Of a DNA stretch of 64,000 nucleotides, positions 18,801 through 34,669 are shown piece after piece; position 1 is the stretch's first letter; every line of letters begins with the position of its first letter. The DNA is from Vitrella brassicaformis CCMP3155 (lineage: Eukaryota; Protista; Chromerida), in NCBI GenBank assembly GCA_001179505.1, contig CDMY01000224.1, forward strand, positions 62,001 to 126,000, given 5' to 3'. Position numbers and translations under genes: made by a program. The notes beneath the pieces were generated by a model. The model was not told the origin of the DNA. It made no database searches and worked only from the letters and a program-made list of their open reading frames with translations.

Positions 18801-21100
18801 GCAACATCGAGGCGGCAAGGTCCGAGAACAGATCCGGGTCAGATACGCCTGCAGGACACACAACACACGCACCCAGAGAGAGATGGCATGGATGAGATGG
18901 GTTGGCCCTTGTTGTGTTGCATCTGTGTAAACAAACGCTCGAGCGTGGTACCAGCATTTGCATACGCCCACGCGACGGTGCAGAGGTCCCTGGCTGCCAG
19001 GTCCAGCATGAACGACCGGATGGTGGGCGAGATGGTGAACTTGAAGAGCTCCTCGTCGGCCTCCTCCACCCTGCTCATGGCCCAGGTCAGCTGCACCACG
19101 TCGCGCACCGTGCACTGCTCCACCTGCCGCTCCAGAGACCGGCGGATCTTCTTGAACAGACTGGGGTCGGTGTAGGACATGCTGGCGAAGGCGTGGGCCA
19201 CCCCGGCGATCTCCTGCATGGAGAACTGGTCCATCCCCTTCTGCACCTTCTGCGACAGCTGCGCGAACAGATGGGGGTCCCGCACATCCAGCTTGGCCAG
19301 CGCCGAGCACACCACTGTCAGGTCGAGGGGCGTCTTGAACTCCTCATACCGATACTTGACGGCCTCGACGAGCTGCTCCTTGAGCGGCATGGCCTCCTTG
19401 ATGGCGAACGACAGCTTTGAGAGGCAGAAGAGTGCGGTGCTGAGGTGCTGGCCCTCGAACTTGGGCACGTGCTGCGTGCACTGCACCATCAGTGACGGCA
19501 GCCACTTGGGGGCGTGCTCAAGCTTGACCAGACCCCAGAACAGGTTCACCAGCCCTTGCGGCCCAAGGTGCACCAGCATCCTCTCGGCAGCGACCAGCAG
19601 CTCCACGAACCGCTCGTCCTTGACGATCGTCTGCCGCTGGTACGGAGTGACGTAGCGCCCCAGCCGATGGACGGCCGTCGTCACGTTGACCTCGTCCATG
19701 TGCCCGATGTTGCCGCCCACAGTGGTGAGGATGGCCGCGACGCTCCTGGCCTTGACGAGCTCCTGCTGCACCTGCAGCCGCTCGGGAGCCATGTTCATCC
19801 ACGTCTCCACCGGCAGCTTGGTCGCCGCACGAACCAGCTCCGCGGGGGAGTGGGCGTCCACCTCCGTCGGCGGCGCCGTCACGTCGGCTTCGTCGCCATG
19901 GCGAGCGGGAGAAGTGTCGCCCTGGCCGAAGAGCATGGCACGGATCTTGGCCTTCTCCTCTTTCTCTGACAGAGACGGCTCCTGCCCGATGTCGTCAATC
20001 AGCGCGCTGCCTCGCACCATCCTCAGCTGCCCGTGGTCATCCCTCTCGCCGAGCCGGTCCATGGCCTCTGCAGCAGGCTTCTGCAGGGGCCCGGTCGTGG
20101 CATTGCTCTCGTGTGTCGCCTCTTCTTTGGCCGCTGCTGCTGAGTAGATTGATGCGTCGCTGGAGGTCTCTGCCTCCAGCTGAGAGAGGGAGGCCAGGTC
20201 GAGAGCAGACCCAGGGGTGGTCTTGCCCCTGGTGCTGTGGCTGTGCTGTGCCGCCCGGTCCTCCTTGTCCCAACTGGGTACGCCCTTCATGCTGCCGCCC
20301 GAGGGGAAGAGGTCCCCCTCCCCTCCCTCCCCCTCGTCGATGGCCGGCAGCCTCCTGCCGTCGGCCTTGTCCTTGTGCCTGGCCTTCTCCTCCTTCCTCC
20401 TCAGCTGCCTCGCTGCCAGGCTCTCCCGCGTCTTGGCCACCTTGTGCAGCTCCTTCTCCCTGATCTCCTCCCAAAACGTCTTCTGGTACAGCGGCTCGTC
20501 TGTCTTGAGGTCGCGCAGAGAGAAGCGCGACTTGCCCTTGTTGCGCCGGCCGGCATCTTTGTCCATCTCCTTGAGCGGCAGATCGTCCTCGTCTGCCTGG
20601 CTCATCGTGGACTTGCCGGCCTTGCGCTCCAGCCGCCCCCCCTTGCCCCTCCTCGGCATGGCCTCGGCCTCCACCTCCTCTGTGGACTTGAAGAGAGTGC
20701 TGGGGTGTGCCCCGTAGCGCATCTTCCGGCGGAAGCTGGAGCTGGTCTCCTCTCGGATGATGGACGTGTACGATGCAGGCGTGTAGGATGGTTCGTCGTA
20801 CTCATCCCTGCCGACCTCCCCCTCCTCAAAGGACTCCTCGAAGGCCTTGGCACGGTCACCAGCGCCGCCCGCACTTGACGACATGCCTGCCGCTGCAAGC
20901 CGGACATGCTGCAAGGCCGGGATGGATGAGGGCTGAGACGGGCTGCCGGAGAGAGCCACGCGATGAATGAAGGAGGGGAGGGGAGTGGTTGCATGGCGAG
21001 CACTGCACTCGGCGCCGGCTGGATCTGTAGTTTGTGCCAGTGGTCTTGGGCGCCGCAGGTTGCCGCGATGAATGCGGGATGAAAGCTTTGACGGGATCAT
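15845..21100 (-). CDS. Large helical-repeat (heptatricopeptide/OPR-type) organellar RNA-binding protein with C-terminal RAP domain
   Basis: Counted repeat periods of 37, 37, 38, 37 and 37 aa (DLTVVCSALAKL..DPHLF, EIAGVAHAFASM..DPSLF, DVVQLTWAMSRV..DEELF, DLCTVAWAYANA..DPDLF, DISSVAMALAQA..HKELF). RAP-like end YRVSVAFPLEKHLIDV...LRQRQLSLLGWAVHSV. The R/S-rich N-terminus resembles a mitochondrial presequence. About nine exons. Confidence 0.9.
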
Positions 21101-30789: not shown

Positions 30790-31430
30790 CTACGTGTGAG
30801 CCGCGAGATGAGCTGCCTCCCGCCCTCCCTCCCGCGGTCGCGCCTCGCTTCTATCAACGCATCTATCAAATCCCGCTGCCACCTGCACACACACACGAGA
30901 GTACACGACCACACGCATATAGACAGGATGATGACACACAATCCATCCATCCATGCCTCCATCCATCCATCCAGGCATTGTTGCTCACTTGCGCAGCCTG
31001 AGGAGGCCTATTCCGCCTGTCCTGTCGCCGACGGCTTGCGACCTCGACAGGCTGTTGGAAGGATAACACCTGATCCACACACACACACACACACACACTA
31101 TAGTCCATCCAACACGTGGGCGATGACCGCCAGCCAGAGCAGTGCACTTGACGACTTGACTCACCAATAGAAATTGTTCTGCACGAAGAAACACAGGGCA
31201 AAAAGGAGTGAGCAATCGCCACGCCTTAGTCAGTGTTTGGGTGTGGCTGACCGGCCCAGTGCCTGCAAAGCGATTATTGAGTTCCGTCACCACCAGTCCA
31301 CACCTGCAGGCATAACGGGAGCGTTGAATGAAATATGGGGGACGACCAGATGTCTGATCTGTGAGGTCAAACCTGCGTAAGGTGGAGACGACGGCCACTT
31401 TGCCTGCAGAGTCCAGACGCACCACACATT
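30790..31430 (-). CDS. Possible small multi-exon hypothetical gene
   Basis: Three to four phase-compatible GT-AG-bounded segments (VVRLDSAGKVAVVSTLRR / CGLVVTELNNRFAG...RAEQFLL / VLSFQQPVEVASRRRQ...). No recognisable domain. Confidence 0.3.
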
Positions 31431-31720
31431 GCAGCTATGTTGGTGGTGCCGAACGTCACCGGTGTGCTGCCAGCGCTTGCCTGGTGTCGGGACGGCTTTG
31501 GAAGCACCAGGAAACAGCAGCAAGATCACCACGAGCCACACGAGAGCGGGGACTTGATCTAGGCACTTTGAAGGCCACTGCCAGGGATCTAGGGATCTTG
31601 CTGACTCATGGATCGGGTCCCAGAATTTACCCGTTCGGGGGCGTGGGGGGCCTGGAGTCTCGCCGAGTTTCATTGGCGTGTTCCTCCTTTCCTTCCCTTT
31701 GCAGTGACTGAGGAAAGGGG

Positions 31721-34669
31721 ATGGTGAGCGCTGACTTCGAGCGCAACCGTCTCGTCACATGGAAGAGCCTGACAGAGGACGACCATGGTAGGAAGGACCA
31801 GCTCACGGACGTGAAAGGAAGCCTTTCTGGGAGAGGGAGACCATTGGATTCTCTCCTTGGTGTCGTTCGTTGCAGCTCGCGTGGTCACGTCCGCGGTATT
31901 CTTCTGCACGGCCGTGTACCTGATCTACTCAATGGCAAGCGCATCATGTAGACAGGCGGCTGCACGAAGCCAAGGCCCCACCTCTGTGTGTCCTCCTCAC
32001 GTGGCTTGAGTGTGCAGGGCAACACGCACAAGCGCATGATCCGGCAGCCTGTGGAGTTGAGGCTGCAGTTCTGTCTCATCCTCAATGTCTACGTCTGCTG
32101 GTACGCACGCCCGACTGGTTTTCCTCAATCGCCTTATTCGCGAACTAGCCTAGCCTAGCCTGTAATGTGTGTATGCGTCGGTGTCTCTCTGCGTGTGTCC
32201 GTCGTGTCAGGACGTCCGCGCTATTCGCGTGGATTGCTATGGGAAACATGGATGACAGCACGTAAGGAAGGAAGGACTCCATCCAGTACGTATTATTGCC
32301 GTCTGTGACAAGACAGGTCATCTCATCAATGTGTGTGTGTGTGTGTGTGTCTGTGTGTTGTTACCTACCTGCAGGACCGGCGACGTGTCTAAGTACGTCG
32401 AATGGCTGTTGACGTGCCCCGTCATGCAGTACCAGATGGTCGTGTTGGCTGGGACCAAAGTCAACCCACGGCGCAAGTTCGAGGCCCCGATGGTGACGGC
32501 CTGCATGCTTCTCAGCGGCATGACGGCCAGCCTGATGGCCAACAGAATTGTCAAGATGGCCTTCTTCATGGTGGGTGTTGGGTTTTTGGTGTGGCTAATC
32601 ACAATCATCAACGGGCTGATCATGGAGCACACCGACGGCCGGGAGAGCCTGCTGCAGGGCCGCGGATACCACCGCATCGTCGTCTGCACCTTGGTCACCA
32701 GCTGGTTCCCCTTTCCGCTCTTCTGGTCGGTGAGACAGTCAGACACCCGGACCTGCACCACACCACCGGACACCACCATGCGCACTCACTGTGTCTCCTT
32801 GTCTCTCTGCCCGCCCGCCCGCCTGCCTGCCTGTCTGTCTGTCTGTCTGTCTGTCTCTCATTCAGGCTGGTGTCTGCTGATGGGTTTGCTCTCGCGAGAG
32901 GGGGCCGCATCAGACTTGCACTGACCATCCTTAACGCCTCAGCCAAGATAGGATTTATCCTGTAGGCACACGCGGGACGGCAGGTCCCGACTCATGCGGA
33001 TGGATGAGTGGACTGGCGAGATCTTCCCNNNNNNNNNNNNNNNNNNNNNNNNNNNNNNNNNNNNNNNNNNNNNNNNNNNNNNNNNNNNNNNNNNNNNNNN
33101 NNNNNNNNNNNNNNNNNNNNNNNNNNNNNNNNNNNNNNNNNNNNNNNNNNNNNNNNNNNNNNNNNNNNNNNNNNNNNNNNNNNNNNNNNNNNNNNNNNNN
33201 NNNNNNNNNNNNNNNNNNNNNNNNNNNNNNNNNNNNNNNNNNNNNNNNNNNNNNNNNNNNNNNNNNNNNNNNNNNNNNNNNNNNNNNNNNNNNNNNNNNN
33301 NNNNNNNNNNNNNNNNNNNNNNNNNNNNCCCCCCCTGTAATGTGGATTGGATGCCTGTAGGTTCCTAACAATGTGCCGCAAAAAGTGGATGCGCAAGTGA
33401 GCTGAGCTGAGCTGACTCCAACGAGCTTTTCCGTCCGCAACGCACCGCGACGTCTTTTTGTGCCTGTCTGTCATCTCATCAATCAGTGCGATAGCCAAGC
33501 GGAACCTGTCGCGGCAGCTGAGCAGGTCCAAATTCAACATCGACGTCGTCTCAGACCTGGACCAAGTAAGCGACGAGGGGAAGGGCAGCAACGCACCCCA
33601 CACCACACCACCACTGCTGCCACGTCTGTCTGTCTGTGTGCGTGTGCAGGGACTGATGGGTGCGATCGAGGAGTTCGTCGGCGCCAAGGAACACGACAAG
33701 GATGACGTAGGCAGACAGACATGCGCACATCCATCCATCCATCCATTCATTGTGTCGCGTCAATGGATGGCGTGTGTATGGTCGGTATGCATCACTGCAG
33801 ATAGAGCCGCCCATCCAGATGTTCATCGAGGACTGGAGCCTGGGAAACCGAAAGGAACTCAGCAATGCAATCTTTCACTTCATCAAAGCCAACCGGTCAG
33901 CCCCCCACTTACTGACTCACAAACACACACACGCACACACACACACACGCGTCCGCGCGCGCGCAGAGAGACACACGCAGAGAGACATTGCCTGCGGCTG
34001 GCCGCCTCCCCTCCCTGCAGGTCCAAAGTCGACATGTCTCAGTCCCACAAGGCCTTCCGTGGCGACGACGACCTTGACGATGGCGACGGCTACAGCGAGG
34101 CCCTCGCCAACGAGGGAGTGGACGACCCACCGGCTTCCCATCATTCTCAGTCCCACCCCCACAACCCCCCCAAGCATGGCCCCACCGCCAGCACAAGCCT
34201 GCAGCACTCACAGTCGGGCCACTTGGACACCAAACAGACGCAGGGGTCACATCCCAAGGTGAGCAGCGGGAGGCGGACCAAGAGAGCTGGATCACTGACA
34301 CGCTTCGATCTCAGTGGGACCACAAACATCAACACATCCAAAGGCAGCAGCAGCGGTGCTAGTGCCATCAAGCAGCAGCACCATCAACAGCAGAGGGGCC
34401 GCAGCAGCAGCAGTGCATCGCTTGGCGGGGGTGGGGGGCGGCTGCATAGGAGTGATAGCAACGTGTCTCACAACCATGCAAACGTCAATGACGAGAATGA
34501 CGACGATCGTGCGTTGCCTGTATTGCCGGCCAAGAAGGCATTGGGTGTTAGCTCTGGTGTAGTGGGTGGCGGGTTAGGAAGTGGGAAGGTAGCTATGGCG
34601 GTGGCCTCGCCTACTGGGTCGTACCATGCCGACCTCCTCCCGGTCATGCAGGGAGACCAAGACGACTGA
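31721..34669 (+). CDS. Divergent type-1 (microbial) rhodopsin, 7TM plus long cytoplasmic C-terminal extension
   Basis: Eleven phase-compatible exons: 31721-31787, 31876-31934, 32018-32100, 32211-32261, 32375-32725, 32866-32961, 33361-33396, 33487-33565, 33650-33706, 33801-33895, 34021-34669. TM3 KYVEWLLTCP, TM6 SWFPFPLFWLVSADGF, TM7 LNASAKIGF with the retinal Lys at 32945-32947. Confidence 0.9.
33029..33328. other. Assembly gap (300 N) inside a rhodopsin intron
   Basis: Run of N flanked by C tracts. Splice phases on both sides are compatible, but a hidden exon cannot be excluded. Confidence 0.99.

What the first reader, a model, noticed from the sequence alone, without database searches (positions are those of the whole stretch)
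31721..33396. Divergent microbial rhodopsin with an unusual counterion complex (R to K, second Asp to Asn)
Seen: after manual splicing there are seven TM helices with TM3 KYVEWLLTCP, TM5 VKMAFFMVG, TM6 SWFPFPLFWLVSADGF and TM7 LNASAKIGF. Known: these align with channelrhodopsin-2 (RYAEWLLTCP; VKVIFFCLG; SWGMFPILFILGPEGF; IDLMSK) and BR (RYADW; LDVSAK). The retinal Lys and the TM3 Glu are kept. The conserved Arg is Lys, the TM7 Asp is Asn, the TM4 DC-gate Asp appears to be Thr, and TM2 lacks the channelrhodopsin glutamate ladder. Inference: neither a standard pump nor a cation channel. It may be a spectrally shifted or bistable sensory photoreceptor, or a new channel type, and is of possible optogenetic interest.
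Basis: partly seen in the sequence, partly recalled or inferred. Interest (0 to 1): 0.85.

Follow-up and report, generated by a model that had tools for sequence, protein, structure and literature searches.

The report
Known-type alveolate channelrhodopsin gene
This is a real, expressed light-sensor gene of a chromerid alga (probably Vitrella brassicaformis), but its "odd" residues are the published hallmark of the dinoflagellate/chromerid channelrhodopsin family, and the protein is most likely the one already expressed and measured in 2023 (CEL94649).

Summary
An 11-exon gene on the + strand (31721-34669, 540 aa) encodes a 7-TM microbial rhodopsin. It has K93-Y-V-E96-W-L-L-T-C-P in TM3 and L-N227-A-S-A-K231 in TM7. 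The N gap (33029-33328) lies inside intron 6. A ~90% identical metagenomic relative (L001) crosses that place with a continuous 84-nt intron, and its TM7 exon is 100% identical. Spliced RNA-type contigs confirm 6 of 10 introns. The e6|e7 joint across the gap is inferred, not seen in RNA.

Glu at the D85 place, Asn at the D212 place, Ser/Thr at the DC-gate Asp place and no TM2 Glu ladder are the norm in its family. Lys at the R82 place recurs (13 of 76) and is also in the characterised VbACR2. This is the published dinoflagellate/"Colpodellida" channelrhodopsin family (Govorunova 2021; Kojima 2023).

Kojima's CEL94649 from V. brassicaformis has Glu96 as its only carboxylate at these places. It absorbs at 550 nm and gives small passive photocurrents. 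That matches this gene, but I could not compare the sequences directly. Ion selectivity and native role remain open.

The scan noted other rhodopsin genes in this genome, but not this one on other DNA.

The parts
31721..31787 (+). Exon 1: start codon and short N-terminus (residues 1-22). An in-frame TGA lies 12 nt upstream.
   Evidence: The joint 31787|31876 is seen in an RNA-type contig.
31876..31934 (+). Exon 2: TM1. It is followed by a GC..AG intron (31935-32017).
   Evidence: The joint 31934|32018 is seen in an RNA-type contig.
32018..32100 (+). Exon 3: TM1-TM2 loop and first half of TM2 (E55, R57, C61, N65).
32211..32261 (+). Exon 4: second half of TM2 (S72 at the ChR2 E90 / GtACR1 E68 place) and the TM2-TM3 loop.
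   Evidence: Its 3' boundary is conserved in L001. No RNA contig covers it.
32375..32725 (+). Exon 5: TM3 to TM6 (K93, E96, T100, C101, Q107, T128, G135, G154, W197, F200, P201).
   Evidence: Pfam PF01036 at E 8e-13; PDB; HMMER family hits; an RNA-type contig covers 32494-32675.
32866..32961 (+). Exon 6: end of TM6 and TM7, with N227 and the retinal Lys K231.
   Evidence: It is 100% nucleotide-identical in L001 while the flanking introns differ. No RNA contig covers it.
32962..33360 (+). Intron 6, which holds the assembly gap (N at 33029-33328) and a poly-C tract at the gap's right edge.
   Evidence: Genomic contigs of three runs stop at the gap. The orthologous intron in L001 is continuous and 84 nt long.
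33361..33396 (+). Exon 7: end of TM7 (FLTMCRKKWMR).
   Evidence: The joint 33396|33487 is seen in an RNA-type contig. MMETSP ORF P0131 starts at M240 in this exon.
33487..33895 (+). Exons 8-10 (33487-33565, 33650-33706, 33801-33895): cytoplasmic segment, residues 248-324, with no known domain.
   Evidence: All joints are seen in an RNA-type contig. Identical in P0131. No Pfam family.
34021..34669 (+). Exon 11: 215-residue Ser/His/Gly/Gln-rich tail and the stop codon (34667-34669).
   Evidence: 100% identical to P0131. No Pfam family. No similarity to the tails of family members.

Best explanation
The locus is an intact, expressed 11-exon gene for a 540-residue protein: a 7-TM microbial rhodopsin followed by a ~300-residue, lineage-specific and mostly low-complexity cytoplasmic tail. 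It belongs to the alveolate channelrhodopsin-like family (the 'dinoflagellate ChRs' plus the 'Colpodellida ChRs'). It is most likely the Vitrella brassicaformis protein deposited as CEL94649.

Likely mechanism: all-trans retinal is bound to K231 as a protonated Schiff base. Its only nearby carboxylate counterion is E96, because N227 is neutral and K93 takes the place of the usual Arg. Green light (about 550 nm, measured for CEL94649) isomerises the retinal and opens a small passive ion conductance.

Shown here: gene structure, family membership, residue pattern, purifying selection and partial transcription. Taken from the literature: pigment formation and passive photocurrent. Inferred: identity with CEL94649, cation preference (from E96) and a photosensory role in the alga's flagellated stage.
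For: Gene model and residues. Rhodopsin homology: Pfam at 8e-13, PDB.

Family: only 111 relatives among 1.8 billion representatives. Nearly all carry the TM3 motif xEWxxTCP and the TM7 motif LNxx[SA]K. The named ones come from dinoflagellates, Chromera, Alphamonas and Vitrella.

Tree: the protein is sister to the clade Alphamonas + VbACR2 (CEM28120) + five Chromera proteins (84/86), inside a starred 15-row clade. Grouping it with the dinoflagellate K-E-N-K subclade is rejected (AU p 0.022).

Literature: the TCP plus Asp212-to-Asn hallmark and small green-peaked passive currents in mgdChR1 and dSmChR1/2 (PMC8406140). CEL94649 has Glu96 at the D85 place as the only carboxylate among the E68(GtACR1)/D85/D212 places, absorbs at 550 nm, gives ~59 pA currents reversing near 0 mV, and was expressed as residues 1-291 (PMC10147648). 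My model has E96, S72 and N227 at exactly those places.

Selection: the ortholog on L001 keeps every exon boundary, with dN/dS 0.12 in the rhodopsin part.

Transcription: six splice joints in RNA-type contigs, and MMETSP ORF P0131 equals residues 240-540.
Against: Identity with CEL94649 could not be checked residue by residue. The tools showed no annotated protein from this window's own genome region; a control with a neighbouring 753-aa ORF gave the same blank. The paper's alignment is an image. Two unrelated family members (P0056, P0084) also have Glu at residue 96, so the numbering match alone is weak.

No RNA contig covers the TM7 exon or the e6|e7 joint. Both transcript assemblies break exactly at the start of exon 7.

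All tested proteins with the E/N pattern gave only tiny currents (20-60 pA), so channel activity may not be the native function. Placement next to the VbACR2 clade is moderately supported only (84/86), and the branch is long.
Confidence: 0.8

Rival explanations
1. It is a sensory (non-channel) photoreceptor. Light-driven changes are passed to partners through the long cytoplasmic tail, and the small heterologous currents are a leak or an intramolecular charge shift.
For: Currents in every tested protein with the Glu/Asn pattern are tiny: about 20 pA for mgdChR1 and dSmChR1, and 59 pA for CEL94649. Residues 248-325 are almost unchanged in the relative L001 (2 of 78 residues differ). Family members carry long and varied C-terminal extensions.
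Against: The published currents reverse sign with voltage, which indicates passive conductance. The low amplitudes were attributed to poor membrane trafficking. The sister clade includes a robust anion channel, VbACR2 (0.89 nA). The tail has no recognisable signalling domain.
Confidence: 0.17
2. It is a separate paralogue of the family, absent from the visible annotation, and not CEL94649. It would then be a new, untested member.
For: No annotated protein containing exon 5 or exon 11 was returned by any search. Another scan note reports an unannotated chromerid ChR gene elsewhere in this genome.
Against: The control shows that the tools return no annotated protein for a neighbouring gene of this window either. 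VbACR2, from elsewhere in the genome, is visible. No other visible Vitrella protein fits the CEL94649 description, whereas this one fits at three places and in numbering.
Confidence: 0.1
3. The gene is broken, or its mRNA skips the TM7 exon, so no retinal-binding protein is made.
For: No RNA contig covers exon 6. An RNA contig and the MMETSP ORF both begin exactly at exon 7. An unread gap lies in intron 6.
Against: Exon 6 is 100% identical in L001 while the neighbouring introns have diverged. The splice sites are canonical and conserved, and the frame is kept. dN/dS is 0.12. RNA depth is only 2-8 and 3'-biased, and exon 4 is uncovered as well. If the protein is CEL94649, it bound retinal.
Confidence: 0.03
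4. It is a light-driven ion pump.
For: Profile search ranks pumps (MrHR, archaerhodopsins) slightly above channelrhodopsins among solved structures. Trp sits at the BR W189 place.
Against: The motif is E-T-Q (E96, T100, Q107), with no proton donor and no second counterion. The published currents of relatives, and of the likely same protein, reverse with voltage.
Confidence: 0.03

Closest known systems
CEL94649, the channelrhodopsin-like protein of Vitrella brassicaformis (Kojima et al. 2023, PMC10147648)
   Same: Glu at residue 96 at the BR D85 place. No carboxylate at the GtACR1 E68 and BR D212 places. The 7-TM domain fits within residues 1-291. It groups with VbACR2.
   Different: Nothing known. 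The paper left ion selectivity undetermined.
VbACR2 (CEM28120 = P0022), the blue-absorbing anion channelrhodopsin of V. brassicaformis
   Same: Lys at the R82 place, the TCP motif, and Thr at the DC-gate Asp place. It belongs to the sister clade in the tree (84/86).
   Different: VbACR2 has Gln128 and Asp257 where this protein has Glu96 and Asn227. Identity is only 38% over TM3-TM6. VbACR2 absorbs at 440 nm and conducts anions.
Dinoflagellate ChRs and metagenomic homologues (mgdChR1, dSmChR1/2; Govorunova et al. 2021, PMC8406140)
   Same: TCP motif in TM3, Glu at the D85 place, Asn at the D212 place, and Ser at the ChR2 E90 place. Green-peaked, very small passive currents. Long C-terminal extensions.
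   Different: Most have Arg-Pro-x-Glu-Trp rather than Lys-Tyr-Val-Glu-Trp. The tree puts this protein on the colpodellid side, and the AU test rejects nesting it in the dinoflagellate Lys subclade (p 0.022). The tails are unrelated.
Chlamydomonas channelrhodopsin-2
   Same: The TM3 string xYxEWLLTCP, the TM5 string VKxxFF, and the TM6 string SWxxFP...EGF.
   Different: No TM2 glutamate ladder (only E55), Thr128 instead of Asp156, Asn227 instead of Asp253, Ile232 instead of Asn258. Similarity is weak (E 3e-4 for TM3-TM6).
Bestrhodopsin-like and enzyme-linked rhodopsins noted elsewhere in this genome
   Same: Type-1 rhodopsin fold and the same organism.
   Different: No extra N-terminal helix, and no bestrophin, kinase, cyclase or PAS domain. 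The nearest relatives carry none either.

Membership tests
Microbial (type 1) rhodopsin | Seven TM helices with homology to the Bac_rhodopsin family | tested here: met
   PF01036 at E 8e-13 on exon 5 alone; PDB rhodopsins; hydropathy.
Microbial (type 1) rhodopsin | Retinal-binding Lys in TM7 and aromatic pocket residues | tested here: met
   K231 aligns with the family's nearly invariant Lys. W97, W197, F200, P201 and W204 are present.
Dinoflagellate/alveolate ChR family (Govorunova 2021) | [quoted passage not shown] | tested here: met
   T100-C101-P102. At these columns Thr is in 76/76 and Cys in 75/76 of the relatives.
Dinoflagellate/alveolate ChR family (Govorunova 2021) | Asp212 of bacteriorhodopsin replaced by Asn | tested here: met
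   N227. Asn is found in 64/76 relatives. The feature is stated in PMC8406140.
Dinoflagellate/alveolate ChR family (Govorunova 2021) | Clusters with the family in sequence searches and in a tree | tested here: met
   All best HMMER hits are of this family. In the tree it sits in the clade that also holds the colpodellid ChRs, next to the dinoflagellate clades.
Colpodellida ChRs (Kojima 2023) | From V. brassicaformis or C. velia and grouping with VbACR2 | tested here: met
   Sister to Alphamonas + VbACR2 + Chromera at 84/86, which is moderate support. The alternative placement is rejected.
Channelrhodopsin (functional class) | Light-gated passive ion conductance | not testable with these tools
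   Published only for relatives and for the likely same protein, CEL94649.
Anion channelrhodopsins | Non-carboxylate residue at the BR D85 place | tested here: not met
   E96. Kojima et al. state that all known ACRs have a neutral residue there.
Chlorophyte cation ChRs (ChR2 type) | TM2 Glu ladder, DC gate Cys128/Asp156, Asp253, Asn258 | tested here: not met
   Only E55 in TM2. C101 is kept, but there is T128, N227 and I232.
Outward proton pumps (DTD/DTE) | Carboxylate acceptor plus carboxylate donor at the D96 place, and Asp212 | tested here: not met
   The motif is E96-T100-Q107, with N227.
Bestrhodopsins / enzyme rhodopsins | Extra TM0 helix and a fused bestrophin or enzyme domain | tested here: not met
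   Only 22 residues precede TM1, with an in-frame stop upstream. No Pfam domain in residues 248-540 or in the long relatives.

The most novel reading that the evidence does not exclude
The Glu/Asn-type alveolate rhodopsins, this one included, may not be true channels in the cell. They could be sensory receptors with a single-carboxylate (possibly long-lived or bistable) photocycle that signal through their lineage-specific cytoplasmic tails. The tiny currents seen in animal cells would then be a by-product.
Probability: 0.15. Interest if true: 0.55.

Novelty: already known. Interest (0 to 1): 0.2.

Why it matters
It matters little as a discovery. The family and its Asp-to-Asn hallmark were published in 2021, and what is very probably this exact protein was expressed and measured in 2023.

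What this check adds:
- A complete 11-exon, 540-residue gene model.
- Evidence that the assembly gap sits harmlessly in a short intron.
- Evidence of purifying selection from a close metagenomic relative.
- Evidence that the Vitrella protein keeps the dinoflagellate-type Glu/Asn counterion pattern while its colpodellid sister clade (VbACR2 and the Chromera proteins) switched to Gln/Asp.

Still open and testable are its ion selectivity, why all Glu/Asn-type members give such small currents, and its role in the alga.

Tried and rejected
1. Bestrhodopsin or enzyme-rhodopsin reading, a lead from scan notes on other genes of this genome. Rejected: no TM0 helix and no bestrophin, kinase, cyclase or PAS domain, either here or in long relatives.

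2. Direct retrieval of the annotated protein, to prove identity with CEL94649:
- A profile search seeded with exon 5 found only relatives.
- A search with the exon-11 tail, using a 403-aa stop-free reference, found only the MMETSP partial ORF P0131.
- Exact look-ups failed.
- A control with a neighbouring 753-aa ORF showed that no annotated protein of this window's region is returned at all. The blank is therefore uninformative.

3. The supplements of Kojima 2023 and Govorunova 2021 hold no searchable sequence of the protein.

4. The C-terminal 300 residues have no Pfam family and no similarity to the tails of 130 family proteins.

5. A profile search against the PDB shows no solved structure of this family. 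Pumps, ChRmine and C1C2 all score alike (1e-22 to 1e-17), so it does not help to classify function.

6. Structure prediction of the whole protein was not run.

7. Grouping with the dinoflagellate Lys-Pro-x-Glu-Tyr subclade, which gave the best exon-5 hits (P0002, P0003), is rejected by the AU test (p 0.022).
Full report
**What is there.** Reading 31000-34300 in three frames and joining GT..AG-bounded pieces gives an 11-exon open frame on the + strand:

| Exon | Coordinates |
|---|---|
| e1 | 31721-31787 |
| e2 | 31876-31934 |
| e3 | 32018-32100 |
| e4 | 32211-32261 |
| e5 | 32375-32725 |
| e6 | 32866-32961 |
| e7 | 33361-33396 |
| e8 | 33487-33565 |
| e9 | 33650-33706 |
| e10 | 33801-33895 |
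| e11 | 34021-34669 |

The product has 540 residues. Exon 5 alone matches Pfam Bac_rhodopsin at 8e-13 and solved rhodopsins at 1e-5. Hydropathy supports seven helices. The gene continues through a cytoplasmic segment (residues 248-324) and a 215-residue low-complexity tail, with no Pfam domain.

**The gap.** The 300 N (33029-33328) lie between the donor at 32961/32962 and the acceptor at 33360/33361, that is, inside intron 6.
- A metagenome contig (L001, 2813 nt, ENA ERZ893784) is 88-92% identical to this locus and crosses the place without a gap. Its intron 6 is 84 nt, with the same donor and acceptor.
- Exon 6 is 100% identical at the nucleotide level, while the flanking introns carry substitutions and indels.
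- Genomic contigs of three public runs all stop at the gap, one side ending in a run of C. The gap is therefore probably a short homopolymer tract, and the true intron is of ordinary size for this gene (83-125 nt).
- The frame on both sides is fixed independently: upstream by homology, downstream by RNA and by P0131.
- The L001 ortholog keeps all exon boundaries. It differs at 5 of 174 residues in the rhodopsin part (dN/dS 0.12) and has dN/dS 0.57 in the tail.

**Transcription.** One run (X1) gives spliced contigs, so it derives from RNA. They confirm introns 1, 2 (a GC..AG intron), 7, 8, 9 and 10, and cover part of exon 5. A transcriptome ORF from MMETSP (P0131, 301 aa) is identical to residues 240-540 of the model. 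Neither data set covers exon 4, the start of exon 5, exon 6 or the e6|e7 joint. Both the RNA contig and P0131 begin exactly at exon 7. Depth is low (2-8) and higher at the 3' end, so this is most simply a coverage effect. The TM7 exon in mature mRNA is nevertheless inferred, not shown.

**Family.** HMMER of exon 5 against 1.84 billion representatives finds only 111 proteins at E up to 1e-3.
- Apart from P0001 (the L001 ORF), the best are dinoflagellate or marine-protist proteins of 300-1300 residues, with the rhodopsin at the N-terminus and no other Pfam domain.
- Nearly all carry xEWxxTCP in TM3 and LNxx[SA]K in TM7.
- In an alignment of 76 full domains, the residue counts are as follows:

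| Place | Residues found in 76 domains |
|---|---|
| R82 | Arg 58, Lys 13 (at least 5 switches on the tree) |
| D85 | Glu 63, Gln 6, Asp 5 |
| D212 | Asn 64, Asp 6 |
| D115 / ChR2-D156 | Ser 35, Thr 22, Ala 13, Asp 1 |
| ChR2-E90 / GtACR1-E68 | Ser 70 |

**Tree.** An IQ-TREE (C20 mixture) tree places the window protein as sister (84/86) to a clade of Alphamonas edax, VbACR2 (P0022 = CEM28120.1) and five Chromera velia proteins. This sits inside a well-supported 15-row clade. The 61 dinoflagellate-type sequences lie on the other side. Forcing it into the dinoflagellate Lys subclade costs 22.6 log-likelihood units (AU p 0.022).

**Literature.**
- Govorunova et al. 2021 (PMC8406140) defined 'dinoflagellate ChRs' by the TCP motif and by the 'very unusual' replacement of Asp212 with Asn. 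They recorded small, green-peaked, voltage-reversing currents from mgdChR1 and dSmChR1/2, with selectivity undetermined.
- Govorunova et al. 2022 (PMC8818676) note ChR-like genes in Chromera and Vitrella.
- Kojima et al. 2023 (PMC10147648) expressed two V. brassicaformis proteins. VbACR2 absorbs at 440 nm, is an anion channel, and has Gln128 and Asp257. CEL94649 absorbs at 550 nm and gives about 59 pA currents reversing near 0 mV, with selectivity undetermined. They state that Glu96, at the D85 place, is the only carboxylate of CEL94649 among the GtACR1-E68, D85 and D212 places. Their 7-TM construct was residues 1-291.
- In my model the D85 place is E96, the E68 place is S72 (mapped through VbACR2 T99) and the D212 place is N227. 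K231+60 = 291, compared with K261+58 = 319 for VbACR2.

**Is this gene CEL94649?** I could not compare the sequences. No search returned any annotated protein containing exon 5 or exon 11. A control with a neighbouring 753-residue FAST-kinase-like ORF likewise returned only a 96% metagenomic relative and no Vitrella protein. VbACR2, encoded elsewhere in the genome, is returned with its accession. The blank is therefore a property of the tools for this window, not evidence that the gene is unannotated. No other visible protein fits the description: P0056 and P0084 also have Glu96 but are not NCBI entries. I put identity at about 0.85-0.9.

**How it most likely works.** Retinal sits on K231. The protonated Schiff base faces a single carboxylate, E96, with neutral N227 and with K93 in the Arg place. 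Such a weakened counterion complex fits the green/yellow absorption (550 nm) reported for CEL94649 and the green action spectra of the dinoflagellate homologues. Light opens a passive conductance. Retention of Glu at the D85 place, which Kojima et al. report as absent from all known ACRs, hints at cations or protons. Pumping is unlikely: the motif is E-T-Q with no donor, and the published currents reverse with voltage. A purely sensory role is not excluded, because all Glu/Asn-type members tested so far give very small currents. The tail is unrelated to the tails of other family members, and its role is unknown.

**Solved structures.** A family profile hits pumps (1e-22), ChRmine (2e-20) and C1C2/ChR2 (1e-17 to 1e-16) about equally. 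No member of this family has a solved structure.

**Verdict.** The gene is a member of a published channelrhodopsin family and very probably an already characterised protein, so novelty is low. Other scan notes list further rhodopsin genes in this genome (bestrhodopsin-like, HKR-like and another chromerid ChR). They gave the organism name that led to the literature, but they concern other loci.

Noticed in passing
L001:210-293 versus window 32437/32438: The ~90% identical metagenomic relative has an extra 84-nt GT..AG, in-frame intron inside exon 5 (after ...QYQM) that this genome lacks. This is an intron presence/absence difference between very close lineages. Its read-through is why the database ORF P0001 carries a 28-residue insert.
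   Followed up: partly
window 31935-32017: Intron 2 uses a GC donor (ATG|GCAAGC ... CAG|G). The joint is confirmed by a spliced RNA-type contig.
   Followed up: yes
window 33361 (start of exon 7): A 490-nt RNA-type contig ends exactly at the first base of exon 7, and the MMETSP ORF P0131 starts at M240 in the same exon. This may be low 5' coverage, intron-6 retention, or an internal transcript start. It is unresolved.
   Followed up: partly
window 33022-33335: The assembly gap is flanked by CTTCCC on the left and a C-run on the right. Genomic contigs of three runs all break here, and two carry 10-11 further C. The gap is probably a long poly-C tract rather than 300 unknown bases.
   Followed up: partly
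window 31400-31611: An RNA-type contig of higher depth (31, against 2-8 for the rhodopsin) covers 31477-31611. It continues with sequence matching the window up to 31400, skipping 76 nt without canonical splice ends. It is a neighbouring transcript or a 5' UTR of unknown strand.
   Followed up: no
window 18839-21100 (- strand): A 753-residue ORF with weak FAST kinase-like and DUF6832 Pfam matches. A 96% identical 814-aa protein (P0132) lies on another ENA metagenome contig. This suggests, together with L001, that metagenome data hold a close Vitrella relative.
   Followed up: partly
P0004, P0005, P0010 (C-terminal to TM7): By eye, several dinoflagellate family members share a helical stretch ending in a Leu/Val-Pro-Trp motif about 100-150 residues after TM7. 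It matches no Pfam family. It is absent from the window protein's tail.
   Followed up: no
window 32322-32363, 32798-32870, 33905-33985: Several introns of the gene are made largely of microsatellites ((TG)n, (CTGT)n/(CCGC)n, (CA)n). Short-read contigs break at them.
   Followed up: no
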